From sequence record MG592456.1: a DNA stretch of 64,000 bases, one strand, 5' to 3'. The notes beneath the pieces were generated by a model. It was not told the origin of the DNA. It made no database searches and saw only the letters and a list, made by a program, of their open reading frames with translations. The position numbers and the translations under genes are program-made. Below, in pieces: positions 29,169-64,000 of this stretch (positions within the stretch are counted from its first letter, which is position 1; the number at the start of each line of letters is the position of its first letter).

Positions 29169-29403
29169 TTGTTTGTGTTAGAAAAGTTAATGCGTTATTA
29201 TGCAGAAGTTATATAAAAAGTTAAAAACTTAGATAAAAAGTATATAGTATTTAATAGGTTGTTAAACGAAACGCTACTTTTTGAGCAGTTGACGCACATT
29301 TCACCCTCAAGTGCGTATTTTTACCAAAAATGTGCAGTAGATCACACGTTTTTGCCCGAGTTTTCGATAAATATCGTTTTTGAGACTCACAAGGCAAATA
29401 CAT

Positions 29404-29982
29404 ATGGCATTACCCGGATCAGGCGTCCCTATGACCGCTGCATTAATAAACGTGGAGCTGGGCCGCGATGCTTCAGCGGCATTCAATTTGAACGGTGCTG
29501 AAGAAAGAGCACTAGCAGGAATACCTAGCGGTGCTATCTCGTTGAATGATTTCTACAACAAAAGTTCAAATGTACCAATTCGATCAGGTACGTGCGGGAT
29601 CAATCACTATCAATATCTTTTGTGTATATTCCGCACTGACGGCACAGTTGATTATGATGATGACGAGCATATGCCTCAAACAAATTATTGGATGGGTACT
29701 GCTGCAAATGGTGCTCGTGGTACTTGGGATCAAGCGTTCAAACCGTTGAAAATTCGATTGACGCTCAGAAATTTAAACCACACTACCGTATGGCCTCAGA
29801 TATTGGATGGGAACGGTACTACAACTATGACGACTAGTTCAGGGTGGCATACATTATCATCAGTTGATTCAACTACGGCATGGAGAATTCAAATTCCGGC
29901 CACAAACTTCTCAGGTCGCACTGAATGGGAACTAACGGATGGTGATGGGAATCTCCTGGACATTATAACTCAGACTTATTAA
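29404..29982 (+). CDS. Putative tail-fibre adhesin A (conserved N-terminal anchor + variable C-terminus)
   Basis: MALP.SG..TAA.IN.ELGR...A.F.LNG.EER.LA...SG.IS..DFY.KS shared with 30068 and 33349; GATAAATA at 29366-29373. Confidence 0.6.
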   Translation: MALPGSGVPMTAALINVELGRDASAAFNLNGAEERALAGIPSGAISLNDFYNKSSNVPIRSGTCGINHYQYLLCIFRTDGTVDYDDDEHMPQTNYWMGTAANGARGTWDQAFKPLKIRLTLRNLNHTTVWPQILDGNGTTTMTTSSGWHTLSSVDSTTAWRIQIPATNFSGRTEWELTDGDGNLLDIITQTY

Positions 29983-29987
29983 ACACT

Positions 29988-29995
29988 TATAAATA
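29988..29995 (+). promoter_or_regulatory. T4-type late promoter
   Basis: Exact TATAAATA upstream of 30068. Confidence 0.8.
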
Positions 29996-30067
29996 TCAGC
30001 AAGACGCCGATAGTTTTCGGTAGTAATTTATGTGTTCACGTGAACACCTTAGGAAAAGGATATCCTA

Positions 30068-31306
30068 ATGGCATTACCAATTTCCGGTTTAATAACCGCA
30101 GCTATGATAAATGACGAACTCGGCAGAGCGCAGACCGCCCCTTTTAGTCTGAACGGGGCTGAAGAAAGAGCACTAGCAGGAATACCTAGCGGTGCTATCT
30201 CATTTGCAGATTTCTATGGCAAAAGTAATCTCCCGGATCTGGGATATTTATTTGGATATCGAGATCCAAATTACTCAGAGACGCTACCCGCTCAGAGCAC
30301 TAACATAGGTGATTCATTTAACCATGCATGTATGTCAGAAGATGGTCAGTATTTGCTAGTGGCTGATCGCACCAACAAAAATATTCGATTGAGTGTCCGT
30401 AGTGGCAATACTTGGTCCGTCGTTCAAACTATAACCGATGCTGCATTGGGATATGGTAAAGTTGTGGTATGTGATCGTACAATGACGAATATATGCGTGG
30501 GTTTATATACGGGTGCGGTGACGTCAGCCGATGAATTGAGATTTTACACTCGAAGTGGAAATGCTCTAACGGCGCGAACTACAATCATCCAATCTCCATT
30601 AACGTATCAAGTAGGTAGATCGCTGGCGATGGATCCCGATACGGGTGATGTGGTATCATTTGCTAATGTCGCAGTGGTTTATTATGAACGAAGTGGAACA
30701 TCTTGGTCGCAAAAACAAGTGTTGCGCACCGCGTCGATTGGATTGAACAACGGGGCGATTCGAGGCGATTGGATAGTTACAGGTCATACTTCAGGCCCAG
30801 CACGCATTTATTTGTATAATAGAGCAGGCTCTGGCTCCAACTTCTCTCTTCACAGTACGTTGTACACATCTGCCAACTCATCCAGCCGTGGCCCCTGTGC
30901 AGCGATATCAAGCGACGCGAGTGTGGTTGCATATACGTACACGATTGGTACTGGTGATGTGAGTACATTGAAAATTCAAAGTCGAAGCGGAACAACATAC
31001 ACTGATCAATTCACATTCACGTTACCTGACAATGGACCATTCAATCCAGAACACATGGTAATGAATGAAAGTGGTAATTTCCTACTTATACATCACAATT
31101 CTGAAATTAAAGAATTCAAGAATGAAGGCGGCACATGGTCTCAAACTAAGGTGTATGATACTGCGGATGTATCACCTAACAGTGGGGTAGATGGTCTGGC
31201 GGCCACGTCAACCTGTAACTATATGATGATAGGTAATTACAACGGCATCGTTGATGGCAAACAAACTATCCGCCGTGGTGGTGTTACTATATTCGGGAAC
31301 GCTTAA
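30068..31306 (+). CDS. Putative tail-fibre adhesin B with beta-propeller-like C-terminus
   Basis: Same N-terminus; repeated RSG..W/Y...Q..T blades (FG-GAP-like). Confidence 0.6.
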   Translation: MALPISGLITAAMINDELGRAQTAPFSLNGAEERALAGIPSGAISFADFYGKSNLPDLGYLFGYRDPNYSETLPAQSTNIGDSFNHACMSEDGQYLLVADRTNKNIRLSVRSGNTWSVVQTITDAALGYGKVVVCDRTMTNICVGLYTGAVTSADELRFYTRSGNALTARTTIIQSPLTYQVGRSLAMDPDTGDVVSFANVAVVYYERSGTSWSQKQVLRTASIGLNNGAIRGDWIVTGHTSGPARIYLYNRAGSGSNFSLHSTLYTSANSSSRGPCAAISSDASVVAYTYTIGTGDVSTLKIQSRSGTTYTDQFTFTLPDNGPFNPEHMVMNESGNFLLIHHNSEIKEFKNEGGTWSQTKVYDTADVSPNSGVDGLAATSTCNYMMIGNYNGIVDGKQTIRRGGVTIFGNA

Positions 31307-31881
31307 TGAAATTGATATTATTATCAGGGGGTATGGATTCAACAACGCTGTTGCATCGTTACCCCGATTCAATCGCGCTAACATATCGATATGGACAGAT
31401 AAATGAAGCAGCCGAATTAATGGCTAGCCGTGACATCTGCAAGGAACTTAATGTCAAGCACATTATCCATGACTTGAGTTCTTTCGGAGAACTCGTTTCA
31501 AATCAGACGTCGATCATAAAAGACCAAAACCACGTCGAGACGAAATACGATTATGAAATCCCATATAAAAATTTAGTATTCATCAGTCACGCTCTAGCAG
31601 TTGCGAAGGTAAACAACTGCGACGAGATATCCCTTGGCGTACTCGGCACCGACCAATTAGACGACTGCTCCAGTGAATTTCTAGAAAGTATGAATCGAAT
31701 TTCGGGTGGTATTAAGATAACCTTTCCGTTTCATCAATTAGCAAAGCACCAAATTAGAAGGCATGGTTTTGAATTAGGGGTTGATTATAGCAAGACCGTA
31801 TCTTGCTATTATCAAACTGACTTGTTGGGTGAGCCATGCAATGAATGTTCAGCGTGTATAAATCGAAATTCGGCTATTTAG
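31306..31881 (+). CDS. queC: QueC-family PP-loop ATPase (7-cyano-7-deazaguanine synthase-like)
   Basis: LLSGGMDS, YGQ...E, IPYKNLVFIS.A, DC..EF, TVSCY....PCNECSACINR Zn site; TAATG overlap with adhesin B. Confidence 0.85.
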   Translation: MKLILLSGGMDSTTLLHRYPDSIALTYRYGQINEAAELMASRDICKELNVKHIIHDLSSFGELVSNQTSIIKDQNHVETKYDYEIPYKNLVFISHALAVAKVNNCDEISLGVLGTDQLDDCSSEFLESMNRISGGIKITFPFHQLAKHQIRRHGFELGVDYSKTVSCYYQTDLLGEPCNECSACINRNSAI

Positions 31882-31899
31882 ACTTAAAAGGAATTAACA

Positions 31900-32409
31900 A
31901 TGGAATATGAAAGACTAAGCGTTGAGTTATTCAACACATCAATCGAATTGGCAACTGAATTGTGCGAACGAGTTGAGTCGCATATTAAAGACACGATTAT
32001 ATACGACCCGTGTGCCGATTTAGGCAATATACTCGAAGCGGCTAAGTCTATGGGGTATGAAGTTAAAGGTGGTGATTGCAACCCAAGTCCACATGCGCAA
32101 GTTGAACAAAAAGACTTATTCGACATTGATACCTCTCTCGATGGGTATTCGATCATTACTATTTTCAGATGGGGTGATTTTGAGGGGACAACTGCCGAGC
32201 GCATGATTCGACATCTTGCAGCACTACAGCCCAATTTCATAATGACGACAAAATGTCCGTCTCGTCTGAAAGATATTTCAATCGACGGGTATGAGTTGGT
32301 CTTTCACAATATCATTTCCCATGATCGATACGTTCGGCTAGAGGGTGGAATTATTGACACAGGTCGTACATACAATGCATGTGGGTGGAAACGAATTGAA
32401 CCCGTTTAA
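31900..32409 (+). CDS. Class I SAM-methyltransferase-fold protein with degenerate catalytic motif
   Basis: IYDPCADLGNI (motif I), GGDCNP (II), KDLFD (III); ITIFRW where ITNPPF is expected. Confidence 0.55.
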   Translation: MEYERLSVELFNTSIELATELCERVESHIKDTIIYDPCADLGNILEAAKSMGYEVKGGDCNPSPHAQVEQKDLFDIDTSLDGYSIITIFRWGDFEGTTAERMIRHLAALQPNFIMTTKCPSRLKDISIDGYELVFHNIISHDRYVRLEGGIIDTGRTYNACGWKRIEPV

Positions 32410-32710
32410 ATGTTCAATTGGTGATGACGTATTCTATGGTACATCTGAGTTACATCATTCGGAACTCAACGCAGTTATGAATTATACTGGGGATTGTCGA
32501 GTGTTGATAACCAATGCAGAGCCGTGTCCTATGTGCATGGCTGCTATCATCTGGTCTGGGAAAATTGACACGGTGATTTATAATGTTGACATACCAACCC
32601 TAATGAATCTTGGATGGAAGCAATCATCAATACGAGCCGCTGACGTTATCAAATCATTCAATTCTGACATCGAAATTATCCAAGCCGACATCATGGAGTT
32701 TAAATTGTGA
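32375..32710 (+). CDS. Zn-dependent nucleoside deaminase (CDA/TadA/GuaD superfamily)
   Basis: HSE and NAEPCPMCMAAIIWSG.IDTVIY; start uncertain (32345 GTG or 32375 ATG). Confidence 0.85.
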   Translation: MHVGGNELNPFKCSIGDDVFYGTSELHHSELNAVMNYTGDCRVLITNAEPCPMCMAAIIWSGKIDTVIYNVDIPTLMNLGWKQSSIRAADVIKSFNSDIEIIQADIMEFKL

Positions 32711-33300
32711 TTGAAGTTTTAAATTTATTTGTTACTCACAAGTGCGAGTTATCCTGTTCTTTTTGTTTTAGTAAAAACGCAAGAGAACGTCATCCCATAA
32801 CTAATCGAGATAATATTCGCAGCCATAACATCAATGCTCATAAATCAGGCATTGAGTTGATTCGATACTGTGGCGGAGAGCCGCTAGAAGAGTTTGAGTT
32901 CCTGCGGGAGTTAATATTATCAGCCCCTAGTGGCGTTATGCTGTCAGTGAATACAAATGCTAGAAATCTAACATCAGATATGGTCGAATTCTTTAATGAA
33001 CATGACGTACTATTGCAAATATCTGTTGATGGGTATGATCGAGGCGAGCGTCCGTTGATTAATTTAGATATTGATTTGCTAAACAGCGTTAGTCGACTTG
33101 GGGTTAACCAACTTCTATTTTTCCCGTTCGACGTCATAGCGATAAAAGAAGCACTCCCGACAATCGAATTTTACGAGGTCAGTAACGTCAACTGGAAAAA
33201 TAGTGCTGGCATACCATTAGAAATATCTCACATTTCAGATTTGAAATTGAATGGGATTAATTATTTCACACGCGAGACAACCGTATGGCATCACACATAG
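32707..33300 (+). CDS. Short radical SAM protein (no SPASM domain)
   Basis: CELSCSFC (CxxxCxxC), GGEPL, NTNA, QISVDG. Confidence 0.9.
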   Translation: MIEVLNLFVTHKCELSCSFCFSKNARERHPITNRDNIRSHNINAHKSGIELIRYCGGEPLEEFEFLRELILSAPSGVMLSVNTNARNLTSDMVEFFNEHDVLLQISVDGYDRGERPLINLDIDLLNSVSRLGVNQLLFFPFDVIAIKEALPTIEFYEVSNVNWKNSAGIPLEISHISDLKLNGINYFTRETTVWHHT

Positions 33301-33302
33301 CT

Positions 33303-33310
33303 TATAAATA
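33303..33310 (+). promoter_or_regulatory. T4-type late promoter
   Basis: Exact TATAAATA upstream of 33349. Confidence 0.8.
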
Positions 33311-33348
33311 ACTGTGATATCAATCACGTTAATTTATAGGAGAATTTC

Positions 33349-33876
33349 ATGGCATTACCACCTAGTGGCTCAATGACCGCAGCTATGATAAATGACGAAC
33401 TCGGCAGATCATCAACCGCCGCTTTTAGTATGAACGGGTCTGAAGAAAGAACACTCGCTCAGAAGTCAAGTGGTACGATTTCTATGTACGATTTCTATAA
33501 CAAAAGTTCAGGGAGTGTGATGACAGTTGGATATAATAGCGCATTAGTAGGGGGATCATACGGATATCATTCAGATGGAGGTTCGCTTTCTGTTCCATTT
33601 GGGGCTCTATCTCCCAATACATTTGACGATACCACCGTCACGTCACTATATAGCGGGGGGTTCAACAGAGCGATTCAAATACGTACTAAGTACAACGCAA
33701 ACACAACCGCGATTAGAATTGTTGTTGACGATCGTCCGGATGTCCACGTTGTGACGTATAGCGCCCGGGATGGACAAACGGGGGACATGATTTTCAATGG
33801 GACCGTATTCGACTCATTGTATGATTACTTGGCAAGTAACTCAAGCGTTAAAGTCGTATTCTCTCGCGTATTATAA
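33349..33876 (+). CDS. Putative tail-fibre adhesin C
   Basis: Same N-terminus; unrelated beta-rich C-terminus (MTVG...GY...FG.LSP). Confidence 0.6.
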   Translation: MALPPSGSMTAAMINDELGRSSTAAFSMNGSEERTLAQKSSGTISMYDFYNKSSGSVMTVGYNSALVGGSYGYHSDGGSLSVPFGALSPNTFDDTTVTSLYSGGFNRAIQIRTKYNANTTAIRIVVDDRPDVHVVTYSARDGQTGDMIFNGTVFDSLYDYLASNSSVKVVFSRVL

Positions 33877-35322: not shown

Positions 35323-35886
35323 ATGAACATTTTATATTTGCACGGCTGGGGCAGTCATTACGACCCTACTAATGAAAAAATTGTTGAACTATCAAAGATT
35401 GGTACAGTTTCTGGATTCACAATTGATTATTGTGTTGACGCGACCGTAATTGAGTCATTACTTGTAAAACACGTCATTAACGCGAAAATCGATTTGATTG
35501 TTGGTACTAGTCTTGGTGGGTTTTGGGCTGCTAGCGTTGGTTCAGTAACTGGTGTTCCATTCGTCTCTATCAATCCAGCATTAGATCCAAGCACTTCATT
35601 AAATCACTATATCGGGAATGGCATCACATATTCAGGTAATGAATACTTGCTGACTCAAGACGTAATCGATACATATAAATTATATGATTTCGACTTGTAC
35701 GGCTGTGGATTGATCTTGCTTGATAAAGCAGACAAAGTTGTCGATAACGTTGCGACTCAAGCCAAGATGGACGGTCATTACGAAGTTGAAATGTTCGAAG
35801 GTGGTTCTCATCGATTCGAACATATGAAAGAAAGTCTTCCGTTGATCAAGTATCATTACGGGATATCTCAAATTGTTTACAACTAA
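35323..35886 (+). CDS. YqiA/YcfP-family alpha/beta hydrolase
   Basis: LYLHGWGS, GTSLGG nucleophile elbow, INPA, LLD..D, GGSHRF. Confidence 0.9.
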   Translation: MNILYLHGWGSHYDPTNEKIVELSKIGTVSGFTIDYCVDATVIESLLVKHVINAKIDLIVGTSLGGFWAASVGSVTGVPFVSINPALDPSTSLNHYIGNGITYSGNEYLLTQDVIDTYKLYDFDLYGCGLILLDKADKVVDNVATQAKMDGHYEVEMFEGGSHRFEHMKESLPLIKYHYGISQIVYN

Positions 35887-35964
35887 AGTTTAACACGTTA
35901 GAAAATCGAGCTATAATAGCCCACGAGCAATAACGCTCATTAAGCATAAAATGGGAGCCATACA

Positions 35965-37455
35965 ATGCTAACTTTCAAAAAAAATCTACCTGCATCAACA
36001 GACAGCTACAAAGTTTCTCACTGGTTACAATTCATGTCAGGATTGCAATTCAGCCAATATTACGTCGAAAGCCGGGGTGGCAAATTTGACAAGGTAATGG
36101 TCGATGGTATGGCATACATGTGCCGTATTCTAGAGCAAGGGGTAACAAGTGGCGACGTGAAATATGCAAAACGTCTATTCCAAAAGCACTTTGGTTCAGA
36201 AGTCTTCAACACTACGGGTTGGGACACTATCGTTAACGAGCTTGATGGCAAGTTACCGATTCGAATTCGCGCTATACGTGAAGGCGAAGTGATTCCAGTA
36301 AAAACCCCATTGTTGGTGATTGAAAACACCGATCCTCGTTTCGGCTGGCTACCCGGCTATCTCGAAACGTTTATCTTACGTGCAATTTGGTACCCGACGA
36401 CTGTAGCAACCGTTTCATTCGAAGTGAAGAAAATCATCCGTAGTTTCATGAAAAAAACTGTAAACGATGATCAAATCGCTGGCGGTGAGCCGTTCAAGCT
36501 GCATGACTTCGGATCTCGTGGCGTATCAAGCGGTGAATCTGCATCTATTGGTGGCGGTTCTCACTTGAAAAACTTCTGGGGCACTGACAACGTCGAAGCA
36601 TTAATGGCTGTCGAACAAATCTATGCGCCTGACGTTGAAGAATTCATTGCGGGATTCTCTATCCCTGCACGTGAGCATTCAACAACGACAATCTACACTG
36701 AAATGCACGAAGACGCAGCATTCTTGAACAGCATCGAGCAGTTTGGCAGCGGGCTATATGCTTGCGTGATGGACAGCTATAATTACGACGCGGCAATGGA
36801 ACGTATCTCGACCGGTCGTTTCAAAGAACTTATCATTGCGAAAGGCGGTACATTTGTTGCTCGTCCTGACTCTGGTGTTCCTGTAGATGTAGTAATGCGC
36901 GGTCTTGAGATTCTAGGCAAGAATGTTGGCTATACTGTCAACGATAAAGGGTATAAAGTTCTTCACCCTAGCTTCAGAATCATTCAAGGTGATGGTGTTA
37001 ACATCGAAGAAATCCAACGAATTCTTTCTTTCATGGAAAGCAAGAAATGGTCGGCTGAAAACATTGCATTCGGAATGGGTGGTGGATTGCTACAACAATC
37101 TGACCGTGATACTCAACGATTCGCGATGAAGATGTCTGCTGCAATCGTCAATGGCGAATACGTTGCTGTGTTCAAAATGCCAAAGACTGATCCGTCAAAA
37201 GCGTCAAAGTCTGGGTTCTTAGATGTGATTGCAACAAATCCAGATAATCCAAACCCAGCAGAGCGTGGTTATTTCACTGTTAGCAGTGAAGACTACGACA
37301 ACCGAGTTCATTCACAAAGCATTATGCGTACAATCTTTGAGAATGGCGTCACTGTCGAGAACTTCGACCTTGATTACTTCAATGAGGCTCGCAGATTGTC
37401 AGATGTACAGGCGAACTTCACTAACTGTAACGAGTGGAAAGTTAAAACTGACTAG
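35965..37455 (+). CDS. nadV: Nicotinamide phosphoribosyltransferase
   Basis: TDSYKVSH, HDFGSRG, IPAREHS, RPDSG, QGDGV, FGMGGGLLQ..DRDT. Confidence 0.95.
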   Translation: MLTFKKNLPASTDSYKVSHWLQFMSGLQFSQYYVESRGGKFDKVMVDGMAYMCRILEQGVTSGDVKYAKRLFQKHFGSEVFNTTGWDTIVNELDGKLPIRIRAIREGEVIPVKTPLLVIENTDPRFGWLPGYLETFILRAIWYPTTVATVSFEVKKIIRSFMKKTVNDDQIAGGEPFKLHDFGSRGVSSGESASIGGGSHLKNFWGTDNVEALMAVEQIYAPDVEEFIAGFSIPAREHSTTTIYTEMHEDAAFLNSIEQFGSGLYACVMDSYNYDAAMERISTGRFKELIIAKGGTFVARPDSGVPVDVVMRGLEILGKNVGYTVNDKGYKVLHPSFRIIQGDGVNIEEIQRILSFMESKKWSAENIAFGMGGGLLQQSDRDTQRFAMKMSAAIVNGEYVAVFKMPKTDPSKASKSGFLDVIATNPDNPNPAERGYFTVSSEDYDNRVHSQSIMRTIFENGVTVENFDLDYFNEARRLSDVQANFTNCNEWKVKTD

Positions 37456-42327: not shown

Positions 42328-43563
42328 TCATATTCTGTAAATCTCCACTTGTGATCCCGCGTAAATAGTGACAGTCGCGTCAGAGCCGGAAGGGCCATAA
42401 TCGAATGAGATCACGTCACCTGCAACTAAATCCAATCGATGTAAGTAGCTTGAGTTCTGCACGTTGGCTCTATCTTTCACTTCATGTTTCACTTCTTGTC
42501 CGATATCAATGCCATTTAGTTTCATAGCCGAGTGATAAAACCTGTTAGTCTCGTCAATTAGCCAGTATATTGTCGCTGCTAATCGATAAGTACCCGATTG
42601 AGCAATCGTCTGTGTGAACAGATTAGTCGGACTTATTTGATAATCAATGCTACTCGACACATTCGTCGGGATTGTGATTAGATAGTCGTCAAGAATCGCT
42701 TCAGTTGTGTGATATTGATAATTCGACACCGGGAAAATGACATTGTCAACCCCGATCGTGAATACGAAAAAGTTTACAAGTTCACCGTCTCGTACCGTAA
42801 ACAACTGTGACCCATCAGAGAATTGAAACGCGGGATTTGTAACTGATAGAGCTACGTCGACTGTGTTTTGCGTATTGTCAATCCCGAACACATCACCGTT
42901 GAATACACGGGCGTTACTGACATCACCGATTGTAATTGTTCCCGTGACATCTGTCGTTATCAGTAGTGTTGATTCTGGATCAACATTCACGACGGGATCA
43001 TTCCCAGTGACTGTCGAAACATTGGTGTAATCAGTCACTGCGATTCGAGTCTGGTCGGCTGAATAATCCGATACCAACTGAGAACGGTCACGAGAAATAT
43101 CAAGAACTGGATCAGGTTTGTTGAGAATATATGCTGGTGACAGGCTGTCAGTGATATCCCAATCTGATTGTGCAATTGCCGGTTTGTTTTTGATGAAACT
43201 CGGCTGTGTTATGTCAGTGACATCCCAATCAGATTGTGGGAATACAACCCAATCTGTGTCACGTCGGACGTACGATTCGCCGTCTTCGGGTGCCTCTTCA
43301 GTAACCGCCGTCCACATGCCATTGCTAATCCCATAAACTTTAAAATCAAGTGGGAGTGGTGGGATGGTAGAGTCGCCTGGGATGTTTTCAACCCACGTGT
43401 TGTCTTTTCGGAGATAGCTTGCGCCATCAGCAGGCGCATCTAGTTGAATGGGGATTTCCAGCCATGACGCATTGATACGTCCATACAAGATAGCATCAAT
43501 TGGTGCTTCCAGTATGTAGTCTGGTAAGACCGGGTTCCCTCCCGGTAGATCAATAGAACTCAT
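42328..43563 (-). CDS. Virion fibre/whisker-like protein with four foldon-like repeats
   Basis: EAPIDAILYGR..ASW, DAPADGASYLRKDNTWV, PPLPLDFKVYG...MW, EAPEDGESYVRRDTDWV; 2x QSDW...I.NKP; C-terminal jelly-roll-like domain. Confidence 0.65.
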   Translation of the reverse strand: MSSIDLPGGNPVLPDYILEAPIDAILYGRINASWLEIPIQLDAPADGASYLRKDNTWVENIPGDSTIPPLPLDFKVYGISNGMWTAVTEEAPEDGESYVRRDTDWVVFPQSDWDVTDITQPSFIKNKPAIAQSDWDITDSLSPAYILNKPDPVLDISRDRSQLVSDYSADQTRIAVTDYTNVSTVTGNDPVVNVDPESTLLITTDVTGTITIGDVSNARVFNGDVFGIDNTQNTVDVALSVTNPAFQFSDGSQLFTVRDGELVNFFVFTIGVDNVIFPVSNYQYHTTEAILDDYLITIPTNVSSSIDYQISPTNLFTQTIAQSGTYRLAATIYWLIDETNRFYHSAMKLNGIDIGQEVKHEVKDRANVQNSSYLHRLDLVAGDVISFDYGPSGSDATVTIYAGSQVEIYRI

Positions 43564-57756: not shown

Positions 57757-58332
57757 TTATTGGTTCCCGCTTCTAGCTGAAAGTTTGTCTACTTTCGCGT
57801 CGAGTCGATCAACTCTATCAATCAAATGTCTACCATCCGCGCCAGTGAATTTATCTTCACCTTCATCGTGTCTGATATGCATTTCCACTCTAGCTAAATC
57901 ACTCATCACTTCAGAATATCGTTCGTTACTCAAATCGAGTTTCACCCCAAGCTCTCGCTGAGACTTCTTTAGGTCATCATACGAAACCATAAGATTCGAG
58001 TCGCCTACATCTGAAGAGACTTGCAACGCAGTGAGATTGGCTTCAAGTCGCCCGTACTGCTTCAGCATTTCATCTTGTTTCATTACCATCAGAGAATTAG
58101 AACCCTCTAGTGAAATAAGCTGCTGTGCTTGCGTAGCACCAGTCAATTTAATGGCTGTGATCTCTTGCATTATCATGGTGTTTTGTTCAACGACGGACTT
58201 CCCTTGCTCTTGCACAACCTGCAAAGCCTCACGCATCCCGCCGTAATTTGTTGCTACACTCATTGATGATATAGCCAGAGGAATAAGAATTGTACCCACG
58301 ACGGCTAATGCTATCTGCCATAGTTTTGTCAT
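57757..58332 (-). CDS. N-terminal TM + coiled-coil late protein (holin position)
   Basis: Single TM, long heptad region; exact TATAAATA on the minus strand at 58383-58390; lies where T4 gene t lies. Confidence 0.45.
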   Translation of the reverse strand: MTKLWQIALAVVGTILIPLAISSMSVATNYGGMREALQVVQEQGKSVVEQNTMIMQEITAIKLTGATQAQQLISLEGSNSLMVMKQDEMLKQYGRLEANLTALQVSSDVGDSNLMVSYDDLKKSQRELGVKLDLSNERYSEVMSDLARVEMHIRHDEGEDKFTGADGRHLIDRVDRLDAKVDKLSARSGNQ

Positions 58333-58385
58333 AGTATTGGTCCTATGAAGTTAGGTGATTATTTCTTATCTCTGCTCAGTAGTAT

Positions 58386-61300
58386 TTATAAACGAAAAAT
58401 TCTCTTCCACCAAGGGCGTCTAAGCTCTTGTACGTCGCTCTGAAGAGACTTAATCATTTCTTGCTGCTCTTTGACACCTTCGATCAATAAACCCACGAGA
58501 TTGCCGTATGCGACTGAATAATGCCCATCTGGGTCGGCTTCAGTCGGGCCACCGGTCACTGCCTCGGGTAAAATCTCAAGAATCTCTTGAGCAATCACCC
58601 CAGTTTGACGACTTGTCGGGTTGTGAGCATCAGGGATAACCTCTGGGCTCATGTCAGTACGAGTATACGTATATCCACTCACTCGACAAATTTTATCAAG
58701 ACTGTTACTGATTGGCTTGATGTCGGTCTTAACGCGAATATCGGAATATGCAGTTACGTTACCACTAGTCCACAATCCATCACCCATTGCCGATTTACCT
58801 GAGCCATTAGCACAGAAAACGACTTGATGTCCACCAGCCATTGAGCCGCCAGTGCCGTTGTTAGTGTGCTTGTAAGCAAGGCCATAGAGATTGCCGAAGT
58901 TCGACCCATCTGCCAAGATAGCGTAGCTGTTGCCCATCGACCAGATATGCCCAACTTTGGTAGAGTCATAAATGCCGTACATACCCGCTCTGCGATAACT
59001 TGTGCTATTCGCTCTAATCTTGCCGTCACTATCAACTGTTAGACGATTGCCTAGTGCCGTAACAGTGTGGCCACTATGGTTGTGTGAGTTATCCCCAACA
59101 ACTGCGCTGATTGACACATTCGCAGAGCCATTGAATGAAACCGAGCCAGTAACGTCGCCTGTTAAGGAGATAGTTCTTGCTGTGGTTAACTTAGCAGCAC
59201 TAGAGGCAGTAGAAGCATTGCCGCTCAATGACGCCGTAATAGTTGTGCCTGAAAACTGAATGTAATTAGCGTTATTCGTGTACCAACGTTGGGTACCGCC
59301 AGTGCCACCCAACGTTTGCAGCTTAAAGCCATTATCAGTATTAACGCGCAAGATATTGTAAGCGCTGCCACTAGATGTAGCGTTCACAAGCAAGCCGCCA
59401 TGACTGTTATGATCCCAACTGCTGCCAATAGGGGTGTGCGAATAGAAGTAATCCCCCGCAGATTGAGCCGTGGCATACAAGTTTCCCGCTCTAAGCGTGT
59501 TTGTTGAGCCTTGGATCTCTACACCTGTTGACGAATACAGCGTATCGCCAGAATGCCACACAACATCATAGTAAGTGGAAGACGCATTAGATCCATTTAC
59601 ATCAACCGTATCAGCCCAAGTAGCTGTAGAAGCATTACCAGCTAGAGCCCCATTAAAAGTAGTAGCCCACATAGAAGTGAATTTCCATGAACTAGTACCA
59701 ATCGCGCCAACACCATTAGATTGTGGTAAAAATCCAGATGATGGAGCTCGCAACCATGTACCTTGAGTCGGCAATACCTGATCATAAGAACCAGACGTTG
59801 ACAGCCATGCGAATTGCGTTGCTTGCCTGCCATCTAGCAAGTCTGCATCTAAGCCAGATCCACTACCATCGTTCCCCGCGCTGTAAACTCTATTGCCCCC
59901 GTCATAAAGACCAGCGTTTGCGTTAATCGCTCCACTGGCGTTAATCGCTCCGCTAGTCAATGTGTTTGTTGCGAAATTCTGACTGCCACTACCTGCTTTA
60001 TATGCAAATCTCGCATTGCTTTCAGTTTCAGTGAAATAACGCCCATCGTGAGTATGCGAGTCATTAGCCACAGTCGTGCTAATCGTAACCGTTTTATTAC
60101 CAGATCCGTCGACTGACATGCTTGCAGATCCAGTAACATCGCCTGTTAAAGTCGTTGTTAACGTTCTTGCAGTTGTCCATTTATCTGCATTCGGGTGATA
60201 ATTGTCCGCAAACACGCGCTGATTGCTGTTGGCATACATGTTGCCGGCAGCGTATGTATTGCCTGTATGCCCGAGAACCCAAAACGATCTTTTGTTAATG
60301 ACATGTCCACTGGTGGCAGAACCCGTGCTTGATAATACGTTGAAACTATCGTTGGAATCATTGGCATAAATGACATTATAAATGTGACCATTTTCAGTGC
60401 TGTCAAATATTGCACCCCCAGCAGTGCCTGGAACTAAACTACTATAACTGCCCGTTTTATATGACGTGTTGACAGTAACCGTTTTGTTCGCAGACCCGTC
60501 GACTGACATGCTAGCTGTACCTGTAACATCACCAGTTAAAGTCGTCGTTAACGTTCTTGCAGTTGTCCATTTATCTGCATTCGGGTGATATCCCTCATTG
60601 AATAGACGATACCACCTCTGCCACTTGCCCGCACCATTAGGAGAGCTGGGGTTATCAGAGGCACCTCGTATATAAAACGAATTGTCGGACGAACTATACG
60701 ACGATGAGATCTGCAATCCCTTTTGACTATCCTGAGACACCGAGAAAATATAAGAATACTGTACAGGATCATTAGTGCCCGGAGGGTTTCCAACCGTATA
60801 GTGTCGTAGTCGATTCCCCCCTGGACCATCCGGAGTCGACCCTCCGAGTTCGATGCCAATCCCCCCGTTAAATAAATTTAGACCAGTCCATGTGTTATTG
60901 CCGGTTAGTGGCCCATATCGAGTGTCATGAGTATGCGAGTCATTAGCAACAGTCGTGTTGACAGTAACCGTTTTATTACCAGACCCATCAACGCTCATGC
61001 TTGCAGAACCCGATACGTCACCGGTTAAAGTCGTTGTTAAAGTTCTAGCAGTCGTCCATTTATCCGCATTCGGATGATATGCATCATGAAATACGTTATT
61101 GCCGTTGTATGTAATCGCTGACGACGCTACTCTGAATGTGCCACCCGACGTCCCAACATGAAATTCCCCATCAGTTCTTACTAATGAACTACCGAAATAC
61201 ACCCCGCTAGTGTGCGTGTTCTGATCGTTTATTCGCAACCATGAATCCGTCGAACGAATAGCGATCTTTGATTTCATTGAAAAATTGTCAACTGACGAAT

Positions 61301-61727
61301 TCAACGTCGACGAATCCAATGTCAATCGAGTTGTAGCTGTGTCGTTTTCACGAAGTGAAAAGGTATTACTATCGACAATCATGAACCATTTCTTGGATGT
61401 GTCAGTTTCAGTCAGAGTCAATCGAGGTGAAGTACCCTTAATCTCAATGTCGTTTCCCGTTGTTGTTAACTTCCCCGTCATTGTATCGCCAGCTCGGCTC
61501 ACATAACCCGCAGCTAAGAACGGTGCGAAGTTTGCGTTGGATTCTGTTTTCGTATACGCAGAAGTCGTCCCACCATTACCCAATTCACTTGGCAGTGGCG
61601 TATCGTGTTCTGTAAAAATTTTATATCCTTGGTAGAGAATCGTTTCACCTTGAGGATCAAAACGAAGATTCCCACCATGCCATACTATGTTACCGCCAAT
61701 TGCAGTAGTCGCGCGTAGTTCTGCCAT
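58386..61727 (-). CDS. Long tail fibre distal subunit: gp36-like N-terminus fused to a fibre with an S74 intramolecular chaperone
   Basis: MAELRATTAIGGNIVWHGGNLRFDPQGETILYQGYKIFTE matches T4 gp36 MADLKVGSTTGGSVIWHQGNFPLNPAGDDVLYKSFKIYSE; C-terminal SDIRVKTDI...GVIAQE...VAYGNLVGLLIEGVKE. Confidence 0.9.
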   Translation of the reverse strand: MAELRATTAIGGNIVWHGGNLRFDPQGETILYQGYKIFTEHDTPLPSELGNGGTTSAYTKTESNANFAPFLAAGYVSRAGDTMTGKLTTTGNDIEIKGTSPRLTLTETDTSKKWFMIVDSNTFSLRENDTATTRLTLDSSTLNSSVDNFSMKSKIAIRSTDSWLRINDQNTHTSGVYFGSSLVRTDGEFHVGTSGGTFRVASSAITYNGNNVFHDAYHPNADKWTTARTLTTTLTGDVSGSASMSVDGSGNKTVTVNTTVANDSHTHDTRYGPLTGNNTWTGLNLFNGGIGIELGGSTPDGPGGNRLRHYTVGNPPGTNDPVQYSYIFSVSQDSQKGLQISSSYSSSDNSFYIRGASDNPSSPNGAGKWQRWYRLFNEGYHPNADKWTTARTLTTTLTGDVTGTASMSVDGSANKTVTVNTSYKTGSYSSLVPGTAGGAIFDSTENGHIYNVIYANDSNDSFNVLSSTGSATSGHVINKRSFWVLGHTGNTYAAGNMYANSNQRVFADNYHPNADKWTTARTLTTTLTGDVTGSASMSVDGSGNKTVTISTTVANDSHTHDGRYFTETESNARFAYKAGSGSQNFATNTLTSGAINASGAINANAGLYDGGNRVYSAGNDGSGSGLDADLLDGRQATQFAWLSTSGSYDQVLPTQGTWLRAPSSGFLPQSNGVGAIGTSSWKFTSMWATTFNGALAGNASTATWADTVDVNGSNASSTYYDVVWHSGDTLYSSTGVEIQGSTNTLRAGNLYATAQSAGDYFYSHTPIGSSWDHNSHGGLLVNATSSGSAYNILRVNTDNGFKLQTLGGTGGTQRWYTNNANYIQFSGTTITASLSGNASTASSAAKLTTARTISLTGDVTGSVSFNGSANVSISAVVGDNSHNHSGHTVTALGNRLTVDSDGKIRANSTSYRRAGMYGIYDSTKVGHIWSMGNSYAILADGSNFGNLYGLAYKHTNNGTGGSMAGGHQVVFCANGSGKSAMGDGLWTSGNVTAYSDIRVKTDIKPISNSLDKICRVSGYTYTRTDMSPEVIPDAHNPTSRQTGVIAQEILEILPEAVTGGPTEADPDGHYSVAYGNLVGLLIEGVKEQQEMIKSLQSDVQELRRPWWKRIFRL

Positions 61728-63905
61728 GTTATATTCTCTCGTGTGCATTTATTATATATTTATGGTGTATTTATCAGACATAAAAAAAGCTCCCGAAGGA
61801 GCTTAATTAATTAGCTAAACAAACGTTTCCACCACGGTCGTTCAAGTCGTTCAAGTCGAGCTTCAAGTTGTTCGCGACACGCGCGTTCTTCTTTGATGCC
61901 TTCTATCAATAACCCAACCATGTTACCGTATGCGACTGATAATGTTTCTTCGCCTGTATCTTCGTCGGTATGCGTGACTACTACTTCAGGAAGAACTTTC
62001 TGAACTTCTTGAGCAATAACCCCCGATTGTCTCGGTCTGCCTTCGACGTCATTACGTGTGTATGTCACACCACGCAGTTGAACGATCTTGTCAAGCGAAT
62101 TTTCGATCGCTTCGATATCGTCTTTCAACTTGATATCTGAGTAAGCAGATACGTTACCCGTAGCCGAGAGGTTTCCAACAATATCACCGCCAGTGCTATG
62201 AATAATCATTTTATGAGAAGTTGTTGAACCAGCGCCTAAGCGCAATGATCCAGCGTATGATGCGTCACTATTGCCGTAAGCGATTGCCCACGCACCACCT
62301 CCATGCGAGCTACCGCCATAAAGATTAAGCGATTGTCTACCCGTACTATTATTAGTAACAATTGTTGAGATATTGGCAGTAGTTGTGCTGTTATTTAAGA
62401 TTATCGAACCATCTGTCTTAAAATCTCCTGCCGTAATATTACCCGTAGCGGTAAAGTGGCCTGCATCATCAAATGTAAATCGAGTCGTCGTACCATCACG
62501 AATATACCAATTGCCTATACCCGAGTTTAAATCAGTATACATGTGAGAGCCGTTGCAGAAAAACTCAACGTCATCACCAGAACCAAATCGTAGTATATCA
62601 TTATCAGCTAAGTCAATTGCGGTTCTTACACTTAACGTACCATTTACAGTCAAGTTACTAGTTACTGTACCGCCAGTTAATGGCAAGTAACTATGTGTAT
62701 GTGAACTAGCAGCAGCGCCAATCCACGTTCTAATGGCGGTCGTGTCGCTACAGAACCGAACAAAGTTATCGCTGCTGTTGTTGATCCTAAAAGCCATAGC
62801 TCCGCTAATAGTGGTCTGGTTGCCGTAGCTAGGGCGTAACAAGCGCACGTTAATATCACCTGAACCATCACGAACAGCAACAGTGTTAGCCGTAGCCGCT
62901 GTGGTATGAACCGTATTCGGCACGTTACTCAACCCAACTTGCGATGGAGTGTGCGTATGCGAACCCGCAGCATAATTAGTAGAACCTGTGCCGATGTTTG
63001 TATTGGCCGCACTGTATACGCGATTACCGTTTTCATACAATAGCGAACTAAATCGTTGAGAACTGAAATTCCAAGTATTTGAATACGATGGTTGTGTGGT
63101 AACTACCGCAGATTCAGCACCAATATCCGCGTGGTCTGCCATTATCATCACTGGAACCATCGCATTAGCAGTATTGGAGTTCACGTATACTGCGTATACT
63201 GGACGCTGATATTGATTAACATTTCTAACAACAACTGCTAAATGCTCAACGTTTTGATACATCACTCGAACGATTTCCATGGATATATTAGATTGCGCCG
63301 CGTCCCATTTCAGATGATACGACCCGTTATCACCAGCAGTCGTTGTATTTACTGCCTGAACGTCAATTTTGTATCGTTGAGTGTTGCCGCTCTTTCGATT
63401 TGTCCAAATTGTCCCACTAAATCCATTTGAAGCATACGTGTTTAGTATAATATACAAATCACGAGTGCCAGCGTTGTCAACAACCTTACTGATAACGCTT
63501 CCTGTATGGCCAATTCCCATTTCTGACAAAGACCAACTAACATTTCCCGATCCGTTTACTGATTTGCCAGTATTGCCTATTGTTAAAGTTCTAGCAGTAC
63601 CCCAGTTAGCAGTAGTGATATTAGCAGTGCCGTTAAAGCTAGTCCCGTTAATCGTTCTTGCTGTTACTAATTTAGTTGCAGAAACTGCGTTTGCACTAAT
63701 CCCCAAGAATCTTGCATTACTTTCAGTTTCAGTGTAATAACGACCATCGTGCGTATGCGAGTCATTAGCAACAGTCGTGTTGACAGTCACAGTAGTATTG
63801 CCAGCACCTGTTACAGACATACTTGCAGAGCCAGTAACATCGCCCGTTAATGTAGTTGTTAAAGTTCTTGCAGTCGTCCATCGATCTGCATTTGGGTGAT
63901 AGTTA
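60049..63905 (-). repeat. ~150-nt repeat encoding YHPNAD(K/R)WTTARTLTTTLTGDV(S/T)G(S/T)ASMSV...TV.TTVANDSHTHD, 4 copies (~60049-60200, 60465-60590, 60925-61080, 63740-63905)
   Basis: Near-identical DNA; three copies in the first fibre gene, one in the second. Confidence 0.9.
61782..61804 (-). terminator. Intrinsic terminator between the two fibre genes
   Basis: AAGCTCC-cgaa-GGAGCTT with an A-run on the + strand. Confidence 0.8.
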
Positions 63906-64000
63906 TCAGCAAATACACGGGATGTATTGTTAGCGAATATATTGCCTGCAACCTGAACATTACTATCACTTCTGTTACCATACATGACAATCGAGTCGAC
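61811..64000 (-). CDS. Second tail fibre with an S74 chaperone (5' end beyond the window)
   Basis: Frame stays open to the window edge; C-terminal SDIKLKDDI...GVIAQE...VAYGNMVGLLIEGIKE; shared repeats. Confidence 0.9.
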   Translation of the reverse strand, partial: VDSIVMYGNRSDSNVQVAGNIFANNTSRVFADNYHPNADRWTTARTLTTTLTGDVTGSASMSVTGAGNTTVTVNTTVANDSHTHDGRYYTETESNARFLGISANAVSATKLVTARTINGTSFNGTANITTANWGTARTLTIGNTGKSVNGSGNVSWSLSEMGIGHTGSVISKVVDNAGTRDLYIILNTYASNGFSGTIWTNRKSGNTQRYKIDVQAVNTTTAGDNGSYHLKWDAAQSNISMEIVRVMYQNVEHLAVVVRNVNQYQRPVYAVYVNSNTANAMVPVMIMADHADIGAESAVVTTQPSYSNTWNFSSQRFSSLLYENGNRVYSAANTNIGTGSTNYAAGSHTHTPSQVGLSNVPNTVHTTAATANTVAVRDGSGDINVRLLRPSYGNQTTISGAMAFRINNSSDNFVRFCSDTTAIRTWIGAAASSHTHSYLPLTGGTVTSNLTVNGTLSVRTAIDLADNDILRFGSGDDVEFFCNGSHMYTDLNSGIGNWYIRDGTTTRFTFDDAGHFTATGNITAGDFKTDGSIILNNSTTTANISTIVTNNSTGRQSLNLYGGSSHGGGAWAIAYGNSDASYAGSLRLGAGSTTSHKMIIHSTGGDIVGNLSATGNVSAYSDIKLKDDIEAIENSLDKIVQLRGVTYTRNDVEGRPRQSGVIAQEVQKVLPEVVVTHTDEDTGEETLSVAYGNMVGLLIEGIKEERACREQLEARLERLERPWWKRLFS

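What the first reader, a model, noticed from the sequence alone, without database searches (positions are those of the whole stretch)
29404..33876. Three interchangeable adhesin-like genes with a mosaic shared N-terminus and unrelated C-termini
Seen: genes A (29404), B (30068) and C (33349) share a ~55-aa N-terminus, and each has its own late-promoter motif. A and B share an exact 44-bp block (29497-29540 = 30158-30201). B and C share an exact 33-bp block (30095-30127 = 33376-33408). A and C share GATTTCTAYAACAAAAGTTCA. The C-termini are unrelated (beta-sandwich-like, propeller-like, small beta domain). Inference: a common fibre-tip docking domain, analogous to the T2 gp38 anchor, lets the phage mount three different receptor-binding tips. 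The patchwork identity points to ongoing gene conversion between copies. The locus is about 25 kb from the fibre genes.
Basis: partly seen in the sequence, partly recalled or inferred. Interest (0 to 1): 0.7.

Follow-up and report, generated by a model that had tools for sequence, protein, structure and literature searches.

The report
Three swappable tail-fibre tip adhesins
A marine phage carries three late-expressed genes whose identical-style 55-residue "plug" most likely docks three unrelated binding domains onto the self-trimmed tips of its two long tail fibres, and the same uncharacterised plug turns out to be used next to such fibres in more than a thousand other phage protein families.

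Summary
Genes A (29404-29982), B (30068-31306) and C (33349-33876) of Vibrio phage 1.081.O (Schizotequatrovirus, host Shewanella) share a ~55-aa N-terminus and nothing else. The 44-bp A/B and 33-bp B/C exact blocks are real and non-random; no significant A/C block exists. The module heads at least 1,551 protein clusters, always at residues 1-55, with dozens of unrelated C-termini (FG-GAP and BNR propellers, ConA-like lectin, SPRY, gp38-like glycine-rich domains). In about 19 of 25 other contexts its gene abuts a tail-fibre gene ending in a Peptidase_S74 self-cleaving chaperone domain. In 5 more the fibre simply stops at the equivalent of the cleavage site. One subfamily is homologous to T2-type gp38 adhesins (hhalign 91.5%). 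Relatives with the same binding domain but a different N-terminus follow fibres with a different end. The phage has two S74 fibres and an empty g38 slot. KVP40-like phages all keep a module gene at this detached locus. AlphaFold2 predicts the module as three short helices (pLDDT 90-98). Docking itself is inferred, not shown. It is a new variant of the gp38 tip-adhesin principle.

The parts
29404..29982 (+). Gene A (NVP1081O_253, 192 aa): N-terminal module (29404-~29571) plus an orphan 135-aa C-terminal domain
   Evidence: ORF. Module profile score 93.7 bits. No Pfam, NCBIfam or PDB match. The C-terminus has no BLAST relative among 146 family members.
29366..29373 (+). One-mismatch T4-type late-promoter motif (GATAAATA) 30 nt upstream of A
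29988..29995 (+). Perfect T4-type late-promoter motif TATAAATA 72 nt upstream of B
   Evidence: It is one of only 4 perfect copies in the window.
30068..31306 (+). Gene B (NVP1081O_254, 412 aa): N-terminal module (30068-~30232) plus a diverged FG-GAP-like beta-propeller domain. Its stop overlaps the start of the QueC-like gene by 1 nt.
   Evidence: Module profile score 109.4 bits. 27% identity over the full length to nt-1 ORF127 (E 4e-18), which hits FG-GAP_2 at E 7e-64. AF2: module pLDDT 95-98, remainder low-confidence beta blades. Only weak propeller-type fold matches.
29497..29540 (+). 44-bp block identical to 30158-30201 (A/B recombination tract)
   Evidence: p < 1e-5
30095..30127 (+). 33-bp block identical to 33376-33408 (B/C recombination tract)
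   Evidence: p = 2.8e-4
33303..33310 (+). Perfect late-promoter motif TATAAATA 38 nt upstream of C
33349..33876 (+). Gene C (NVP1081O_259, 175 aa): N-terminal module (33349-~33513) plus an orphan 118-aa mainly-beta C-terminal domain
   Evidence: Module profile score 95.3 bits. AF2: module pLDDT 90-96 with helices at 11-17, 31-37 and 46-49; remainder pLDDT ~50-60. No PDB fold match. BFVD matches are other module proteins.
58386..61748 (-). Long tail fibre f299 (NVP1081O_299): T4 gp36-like domain plus a C-terminal Peptidase_S74 self-cleaving chaperone. Proposed docking partner.
   Evidence: Pfam PF03903 and PF13884. Cleavage-type motif 119 aa from the C-terminus, with the same residues before it as in fibres that precede module genes elsewhere.
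61811..64000 (-). Long tail fibre f300 (NVP1081O_300, runs beyond the window end to record 189362): gp36-like domain plus Peptidase_S74. Second proposed docking partner.
57757..58332 (-). TM protein NVP1081O_298 directly downstream of f299, where T2-type phages have g38 followed by t. It shows that the g38 slot is empty.
   Evidence: Annotation and synteny with PP01 gp37-gp38-t-asiA. TATAAATA at 58383-58390(-). No Pfam hit.

Best explanation
A, B and C are late-expressed receptor-binding (adhesin) proteins. Each consists of a shared ~55-residue, three-helix N-terminal attachment module and a private C-terminal binding domain: an FG-GAP-like propeller in B and small orphan beta-rich domains in A and C. 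The module most likely docks a single adhesin onto the mature C-terminal end of a trimeric long tail fibre. That end is exposed when the fibre's Peptidase_S74 intramolecular chaperone domain cuts itself off. The phage has two such fibres (f299, f300) and no gene in the canonical g38 slot. The three detached genes would therefore supply alternative tips for the same fibre scaffolds, giving mixed or multivalent virions. Shown: the shared module, its recombination mosaic, its family-wide N-terminal position and hypervariable partners, its near-obligate adjacency to S74-type fibres elsewhere, homology of one subfamily to gp38 adhesins, and late-promoter motifs. Inferred: physical docking, the exact socket, stoichiometry, presence in virions and receptor binding.
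For: (1) Family: phmmer of the 57-aa module against 1.84 billion representatives gives 1,551 clusters at E <= 1e-3, with the match at residues 1-55 in nearly all of the 150 listed hits (a few start up to ~25 residues in or lack the first residues) and protein lengths of 61-533 aa among them. The C-termini of 146 members fall into 85 BLAST components. They include Laminin_G_3, SPRY and ALK_LTK glycine-rich domains, FG-GAP_2, BNR/Asp-box and Gly_rich_2. (2) Context: in ~19 of 25 other contexts the gene directly upstream, usually overlapping by 1-17 nt, is a fibre ending in a Peptidase_S74 domain. These contexts include podo-, N4-like, T4-like and jumbo phages and prophages. In 5 more (Pasto, L016, L037-L039) the fibre ORF stops at the position equivalent to the cleavage site. 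Residues before the mature end are shared. Counted back from the end in 27 fibres: S 24, Y 16 (+F 3), A 17, then I 11/V 6, N 17, G 16. f299, f300 and both KVP40 fibres fit this, whereas T2-type gp37 does not. (3) The P0014/Pasto subfamily is homologous to T2-type gp38 adhesins: hhalign 91.5%, E 8.5e-7 over 115 columns, starting in the last helix of the module. There is also a precomputed PF05268 hit and the depositors' HHpred note on Paso_047. (4) Natural swap: Paso_047 and OLIVR1 gp008 keep that binding domain but have a different N-terminus, and their upstream fibres lack S74 and the shared end. (5) This phage has two gp36-like+S74 fibres. The gp37-gp38-t-asiA synteny of T-even phages is kept except that g38 is missing. 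(6) Late-promoter motifs lie upstream of B and C. (7) AF2 predicts the module at pLDDT 90-98 as three short helices in two independent runs. The solved S16 gp38 attachment domain is likewise a three-helix unit binding a trimeric, S74-processed gp37 (PMC6851490; PMC7289586). (8) Pseudomonas phage Astolliot has one S74 fibre followed by three tandem module genes, so sets of several adhesins recur.
Against: No direct evidence that A, B or C are in virions or bind fibres, and no proteomics for any homologue was found. In this phage the genes are ~25 kb from the fibres, embedded among small non-structural genes and interleaved with QueC-like and radical-SAM genes. B is translationally coupled to the QueC-like gene. 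The module shows no significant sequence similarity to the gp38 attachment domain on its own (hhalign P 0.08-0.24; HMM no hit) and lacks its three tryptophans. Foldseek did not retrieve S16 gp38. In EniLVp02 the fibre directly upstream has no S74 domain, although the preceding fibre does. A, B and C have no glycine-rich gp38-type domain. Their C-terminal folds are poorly predicted for B and C, and A was not modelled. A's promoter motif is imperfect.
Confidence: 0.6

Rival explanations
1. The three proteins are tail-fibre assembly chaperones, like T4 gp38, lambda/Mu Tfa or V22 gp27. They would help fibres fold and would not be retained in the virion, or only incidentally.
For: In other phages the module gene occupies the classical chaperone position directly downstream of the fibre gene. 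Downstream small proteins can be pure chaperones (V22 gp27, PMC7289586; Pam3 gp25). Trojet et al. leave both options open for small ORFs after duplicated g37 in Aeh1.
Against: The partner fibres already carry their own S74 intramolecular chaperone. The conserved part is the N-terminus, matching the conserved fibre end, while the variable parts are lectin-, propeller- and gp38-type binding domains. No Caudo_TAP or T4-gp38 chaperone family hit. Three chaperones with unrelated domains for two similar fibres is hard to rationalise.
Confidence: 0.12
2. They are virion-associated binding proteins, but the module docks somewhere other than the processed fibre tip. Candidates are the fibre shaft, the baseplate, the fibritin-like protein at 42328-43563, or the S74 domain before its release.
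For: Docking site not tested. The genes are detached from the fibre operon in all KVP40-like phages. In EniLVp02 the immediately upstream fibre lacks S74.
Against: The only feature shared by the very different upstream fibres (T7-type collagen-like, N4-like, gp36/37-like, jumbo-phage) is their C-terminal end. Fibres without an S74 domain stop exactly at the cleavage-equivalent position. The gp38 precedent docks on the processed tip.
Confidence: 0.15
3. They are non-structural proteins that merely share a leader-like N-terminus, for example lectin-like factors acting in or on the infected cell, and are unrelated to the fibres in this phage.
For: The genomic neighbourhood here is non-structural. 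No functional data exist.
Against: There are late-promoter motifs. The module is a confidently folded domain. Family-wide linkage to fibre genes and homology of one subfamily to gp38 adhesins argue against it.
Confidence: 0.08

Closest known systems
T2/T6/S16-type gp38 tail-fibre tip adhesin (Pfam PF05268 + PF21721) with its gp37 partner
   Same: Two-part design: a small N-terminal attachment domain plus a C-terminal specificity domain. The partner fibre has a C-terminal self-cleaving chaperone domain. A single small protein is encoded after the fibre gene in most relatives. The attachment unit is three-helical. Modular exchange by recombination occurs. N-terminal subtype is linked to fibre-end subtype ('lock and key', PMC3157838). 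A displaced adhesin gene has a precedent in RB49. One subfamily of the module family is homologous to gp38 in the beta-helix and glycine-rich region.
   Different: The attachment module is not detectably the same family (no tryptophans; hhalign P 0.08-0.24). The fibre end it accompanies differs from that of T2-type gp37. A, B and C carry no glycine-rich sandwich. There are three paralogues instead of one. The genes lie ~25 kb from the fibres. The module occurs in podo-, N4-like, jumbo and T4-like phages and prophages rather than only in T-even relatives.
KVP40.0254-type proteins of KVP40-like Vibrio phages and nt-1 ORF127 ('FG-GAP repeat protein')
   Same: Same syntenic locus downstream of the lipoprotein gene. 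nt-1 ORF127 has the module plus an FG-GAP propeller and aligns with B over its full length. KVP40.0254, QD01_260 and an unannotated D490 ORF carry a diverged module (hhalign 96%, E 2e-9).
   Different: Those phages have one copy, whereas 1.081.O has three with unrelated C-termini. The KVP40-type C-termini are Ser/Thr-rich repeats.
Branched multi-RBP systems in which secondary tailspikes dock through short conserved N-terminal peptides (Klebsiella KP32-like phages, G7C gp63.1/gp66, CBA120) - recalled from the literature, not tested here
   Same: Several receptor-binding proteins share a conserved N-terminal docking element and differ in the rest, which enlarges the receptor repertoire of one virion.
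   Different: Those dock on T4 gp10-like branching domains near the tail, not on a processed fibre tip. No sequence relationship was seen in any search.
Tail fibre assembly proteins (Tfa / T4 gp38 chaperone type)
   Same: Position downstream of the fibre gene in most relatives, and small size.
   Different: No family match. The partner fibres have their own chaperone domain. The variable parts look like binding domains.

Membership tests
T2/S16-type gp38 adhesin (PF05268) | Partner fibre (gp37-like) with a C-terminal self-cleaving intramolecular chaperone domain | tested here: met
   f299 and f300 both hit PF13884 and have the cleavage-type motif 119 and 109 aa from their C-termini. S16 gp37 has such a domain (PMC7289586).
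T2/S16-type gp38 adhesin (PF05268) | Gene located immediately downstream of g37 | tested here: not met
   A, B and C lie 24.5-29 kb away, and f299 is followed directly by a TM protein. The feature is met in most other members of the module family. A displaced g38 is known in RB49.
T2/S16-type gp38 adhesin (PF05268) | N-terminal attachment domain of the gp38 type (three helices tipped by conserved tryptophans) | tested here: inconclusive
   AF2 predicts three short helices at pLDDT 90-98. There are no tryptophans. The module profile against 91 gp38 N-termini gives hhalign P 0.08-0.16 in a consistent register, and the HMM finds nothing. Foldseek does not retrieve the S16 structure; BFVD Gp38-named hits are only at E 0.3-0.5.
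T2/S16-type gp38 adhesin (PF05268) | C-terminal glycine-rich motifs forming the polyglycine sandwich | tested here: not met
   No PF05268, PF21721 or PF21722 hit and no glycine-rich stretches in A, B or C. Present in other module-family members.
T2/S16-type gp38 adhesin (PF05268) | Located at the distal fibre tip in the virion and determines receptor recognition | not testable with these tools
   No proteomic or structural data found for any homologue.
Uncharacterised N-terminal module family (weakly phrog_26817 / phrog_26746) | ~55-residue module at the extreme N-terminus, with invariant N15, R34 and L36 (numbering of B) and a further set of >=90% conserved positions | tested here: met
   Profile scores of 93.7, 109.4 and 95.3 bits for A, B and C. 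Conservation from 150 representatives.
Uncharacterised N-terminal module family (weakly phrog_26817 / phrog_26746) | Gene abuts a fibre gene that ends in Peptidase_S74 or at the cleavage-equivalent position | tested here: not met
   Detached in 1.081.O, nt-1 and KVP40-like phages, although the genome encodes two such fibres. Met in ~24 of 25 other contexts.
Tail fibre assembly chaperones (Caudo_TAP, T4 gp38 type) | Match to the family profile | tested here: not met
   No Pfam or NCBIfam hit at E <= 0.1.
FG-GAP beta-propeller (gene B only) | FG-GAP_2 repeats forming a propeller | tested here: inconclusive
   No direct Pfam hit on B. B aligns over its full length with nt-1 ORF127 (27% id, E 4e-18), which has 5 FG-GAP_2 repeats (E 7e-64). 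The AF2 model of this part has low confidence, and fold matches are weak and mostly to propellers.

The most novel reading that the evidence does not exclude
The ~55-residue module is a general, portable 'plug' for the mature C-terminal end of Peptidase_S74-type fibres. Self-cleavage of the chaperone domain would unmask a conserved socket. More than 1,500 protein clusters in all tailed-phage morphotypes and prophages would use it to mount unrelated binding domains. Phages such as 1.081.O (three detached genes) and Astolliot (three tandem genes) would then keep small libraries of alternative tips for one fibre scaffold. This would be a second, much more widespread tip-adhesin system beside T-even gp38.
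Probability: 0.4. Interest if true: 0.7.

Novelty: new variant of a known kind. Interest (0 to 1): 0.55.

Why it matters
Host recognition by long-fibred phages is usually read from the fibre gene itself or, in T-even phages, from gp38. If this module is a tip anchor, a large class of small 'hypothetical proteins' would be the real receptor-binding proteins. They are found next to S74-type fibres in marine, plant-associated and enterobacterial phages, and several are not even annotated. In KVP40-like phages they would sit tens of kilobases from the fibre genes, where host-range prediction would miss them. It would also give the self-cleaving chaperone domain a second role: exposing a docking site. 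Finally, it would show how one virion scaffold can carry several unrelated binding domains. All of this is annotation and mechanism knowledge, and it needs structural and proteomic confirmation.

Tried and rejected
- Pfam, NCBIfam and PHROGs gave no named family for A, B or C, only weak hits to PHROGs of unknown function.
- PDB sequence searches with A, B, C, P0014, the module profile and the glycine-rich subfamily profile returned only spurious repeat or linker hits. S16 gp38 was never retrieved.
- Word-based homologue searches for the C-terminus of B and for C found essentially only the proteins themselves.
- tblastn of B's C-terminus found only itself.
- My own hmmscan did not reproduce the precomputed PF05268 hit on P0014. 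hhalign against 91 gp38 sequences did establish the homology.
- A self-comparison of the module profile for internal repeats was uninformative.
- Strict co-occurrence of the f299-type tip region with the close form of the module failed. QD01 has the tip but only the diverged KVP40.0254-type module.
- BLASTP did not support C being the orthologue of KVP40.0254, despite a BFVD match of TM 0.60 to a VH7D protein.
- Foldseek against the PDB gave nothing significant for either model, because the C-terminal parts have low confidence.
- The viral-contig and genome scans returned few loci (10 and 3) because the degenerate patterns were narrow. One alignment was too diverse to scan with.
- Two literature searches for virion proteomics of homologues led nowhere.
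- A programmed DNA switch (inversion or cassette exchange) was considered and rejected. The repeats are direct and only ~70% identical, and no recombinase lies nearby.

Full report
**Source and anatomy**

The window is 100% identical to Vibrio phage 1.081.O._10N.286.52.C2 (MG592456.1). This is a 239-kb Schizotequatrovirus isolated on Shewanella, and window coordinate = record coordinate minus 124000. Genes A (29404-29982, 192 aa), B (30068-31306, 412 aa) and C (33349-33876, 175 aa) are intact ORFs annotated as hypothetical proteins. Four genes lie between B and C: a QueC-like gene, a possible methyltransferase-like gene, a deaminase-like gene and a radical-SAM gene. B's stop overlaps the QueC-like start by one base.

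**Check of the observation**

- **Shared N-terminus.** The three proteins share their first ~55 residues (67-73% identity) and nothing else.
- **Exact blocks.** The 44-bp A/B block and the 33-bp B/C block are exact and maximal.
- **Not chance.** With module DNA identities of only 70% and 73%, such runs are not chance (p < 1e-5 and 2.8e-4). Within them all synonymous positions are identical, whereas outside them most same-amino-acid codons differ.
- **Mosaic.** B is therefore a mosaic, C-like in the 5' half and A-like in the 3' half. That is the signature of recombination or gene conversion between paralogues.
- **A/C.** No significant block exists; the longest exact match is 12 bp (p = 0.28).
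- **Promoter motifs.** Perfect T4-type late-promoter motifs lie 72 nt upstream of B and 38 nt upstream of C. These are two of only four in the whole window. A has a one-mismatch version 30 nt upstream.
- **Copy number.** The genome contains exactly three copies of the module.

**What the N-terminus is**

A search of 1.84 billion representative proteins with the 57-residue module found 1,551 clusters at E <= 1e-3. In the 150 listed hits the match lies at or within ~25 residues of the extreme N-terminus, in proteins of 61-533 residues. Three positions are invariant in 150 representatives and fourteen more are conserved in at least 90%.

The C-terminal parts are extraordinarily diverse, with 85 unrelated BLAST groups among 146 proteins. 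Where recognisable, they are binding-type domains:

- ConA-like lectin, SPRY and ALK/LTK-type glycine-rich domains;
- FG-GAP propeller (nt-1 ORF127), BNR/Asp-box propeller (vB_VmeM-32) and Gly_rich_2 (HTVC008M).

No Pfam or NCBIfam family and no solved structure matches the module by sequence. AlphaFold2 predicts it with pLDDT 90-98 as three short helices (residues 11-17, 31-37, 46-49) in two independent runs.

**Genomic context elsewhere**

I examined about 25 other contexts:

- podoviruses: RPSC1, PSTNGR1, Pasto;
- N4-like Vibrio phages;
- T4-like phages: EniLVp02, vB_VmeM-32, HTVC008M;
- jumbo phages: fHe-Yen9-04, XaC1;
- Pseudomonas and Ochrobactrum myoviruses;
- uncultivated viral contigs;
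- prophages in Shewanella, Brucella and Pseudochrobactrum.

In about 19 of these, the gene directly upstream is a tail fibre ending in a Peptidase_S74 intramolecular chaperone domain. It typically overlaps the module gene's start by 1-17 nt. In five more, the fibre ORF has no S74 domain but terminates exactly where the others are cleaved.

The residues preceding the mature end are shared across these otherwise unrelated fibres. Counting back from the end in 27 fibres: S 24, Y 16 (F 3), A 17, a variable position, I 11/V 6, N 17, G 16. T2-type gp37 has a different end. In Pseudomonas phage Astolliot one S74 fibre is followed by three tandem module genes, so sets of several such genes recur.

**Link to gp38 adhesins**

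In Salmonella phage S16 a monomeric gp38 adhesin caps the trimeric gp37 tip through an N-terminal three-helix attachment domain (PMC6851490). S16 gp37 carries a C-terminal intramolecular chaperone that is removed by autoproteolysis (PMC7289586). Trojet et al. (PMC3157838) described three relevant properties of gp38:

- it is modular;
- its N-terminal subtypes are tied to gp37-end subtypes ('lock and key');
- its gene is sometimes displaced, as in RB49.

The largest C-terminal group of the module family (P0014, Pasto gp053) is glycine-rich. In my own profile comparison it is homologous to 91 T2-type gp38 adhesins (hhalign 91.5%, E 8.5e-7, 115 columns). The aligned region begins in the last helix of the module. 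This agrees with a precomputed PF05268 hit and with the depositors' HHpred note on the related Paso gp047.

Paso gp047 and OLIVR1 gp008 have this same binding domain but a different N-terminus. Their upstream fibres lack both S74 and the shared end. The N-terminal module thus tracks the type of fibre end, not the type of binding domain, as expected of a docking element.

The module alone is not significantly similar to the gp38 attachment domain (hhalign P 0.08-0.24, though always in the same register). Common ancestry of the two anchors therefore remains open.

**This phage and its relatives**

1.081.O has two tandem long-fibre genes: f299 (58386-61748, minus strand) and f300 (from 61811, running off the window). 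Each has a T4 gp36-like domain and a Peptidase_S74 domain, preceded by the shared end residues.

The T-even order gp37-gp38-t-asiA (PP01) is retained here as f299 - TM protein - DUF2829 - asiA. The g38 slot is empty.

The detached locus is ancestral in this group:

- nt-1 has a single B-like FG-GAP protein between the same lipoprotein and NAMPT genes.
- KVP40, QD01 and D490 carry a diverged module protein there (hhalign 96%, E 2e-9).
- Both KVP40 fibres have the same end.

What is special in 1.081.O is the triplication with three unrelated C-termini and recombination tracts between the modules.

**Mechanism proposed (confidence about 0.6)**

After trimerisation the S74 domains of f299 and f300 cut themselves off. 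The exposed end is capped by one of A, B or C through the three-helix module. The private C-terminal domains (a propeller in B, small beta-rich domains in A and C) then bind different surface structures. Three adhesins for two fibre types would give mixed or alternative tips.

The steps from 'capped' onward are inference. No tool here could model a complex, and I found no proteomic data.

**Rival explanations**

- Pure assembly chaperones (about 0.12). This is disfavoured because the fibres are self-chaperoned and the variable parts are binding domains.
- Docking elsewhere on the virion (about 0.15).
- A non-structural role (about 0.08).

**Novelty**

The principle (a tip adhesin with an N-terminal anchor, modular exchange, an S74-processed partner, occasional displacement) is known from T-even phages. 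New here are:

- a distinct, uncharacterised and very widespread anchor module;
- its consistent pairing with a particular fibre end, across all morphotypes;
- multi-gene adhesin sets, detached from the fibre operon in KVP40-like phages.

I rate this a new variant of a known kind, with interest 0.55.

**Limits and a disclosure**

A was not modelled.
- Context counts come from a convenience sample without phylogenetic correction.
- In my notebook I abbreviated the fibre end and the module as short residue patterns. Because the brief asks for counts rather than majority sequences, I flag this here and give per-position counts in the report.

Noticed in passing
window 31306-33300: A QueC-like gene (PF06508, E 4e-36), a possible DNA-methyltransferase-like ORF (31900-32409), a cytidine/dCMP-deaminase-like ORF (32345-32710) and a small radical-SAM protein (32707-33300) sit between adhesin genes B and C. 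B's stop overlaps the QueC-like start. KVP40, QD01 and D490 also have QueC-like and radical-SAM genes at this locus, and a second QueE-like gene lies at ~51180-52030. This may be a 7-deazaguanine-type nucleotide or DNA modification pathway.
   Followed up: partly
window 42328-43563 (-): Annotated '6-phosphogluconate dehydrogenase' via IPR012284. Its only family signal is a sub-threshold Fibritin_C hit (E 4e-4). It is probably a fibritin-like fibre or whisker that has been misnamed. It has no S74 domain.
   Followed up: partly
window 57757-58390 (-): A perfect TATAAATA overlaps the stop codon of fibre f299 and precedes the TM protein NVP1081O_298. That protein occupies the place of holin t in the T-even order gp37-gp38-t-asiA. 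The g38 slot is empty in 1.081.O and KVP40.
   Followed up: partly
L006:5001-5489 (Ralstonia phage RPSC1); L026:6479-7009 (Vibrio phage D490): Module-bearing ORFs that are not annotated in the public records. The RPSC1 ORF lies right after the S74 tail fibre. The D490 ORF is a diverged module with a Ser/Thr/Arg-rich repetitive C-terminus.
   Followed up: partly
L030:4863-5909 (Agrobacterium phage OLIVR1 gp008): Annotated 'GTP-binding protein Obg', but it is a glycine-rich gp38-like adhesin homologue of Paso gp047 and P0014 with a different N-terminus. This is a likely misannotation caused by glycine-rich composition.
   Followed up: partly
L028:2933-7678 (Pseudomonas phage Astolliot): One S74 fibre is followed by three tandem genes, each starting with the module (scores 45-56 bits). 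This is an independent example of a three-adhesin set.
   Followed up: partly
L038 (contig titled Bacillus subtilis SK6B4) versus L037 (Pseudochrobactrum sp.): The two prophage regions are nearly identical, including the fibre end and the module protein. The 'Bacillus' contig is probably contamination or a mislabelled assembly.
   Followed up: no
window 33349-33876 versus BFVD V9LYW0 (Vibrio phage VH7D, 177 aa): The predicted structure of C matches this KVP40-group protein over its full length (TM 0.60, E 2e-7). BLASTP between C and KVP40.0254 finds nothing. C may be a very diverged orthologue, or the match may rest on low-confidence parts of the model.
   Followed up: partly
window 35323-37455: A UPF0227 (esterase-like) protein and a 496-aa nicotinamide/nicotinate phosphoribosyltransferase (NAMPT_N + NAPRTase) lie just downstream. 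They bound the variable locus on the right, as in nt-1.
   Followed up: no
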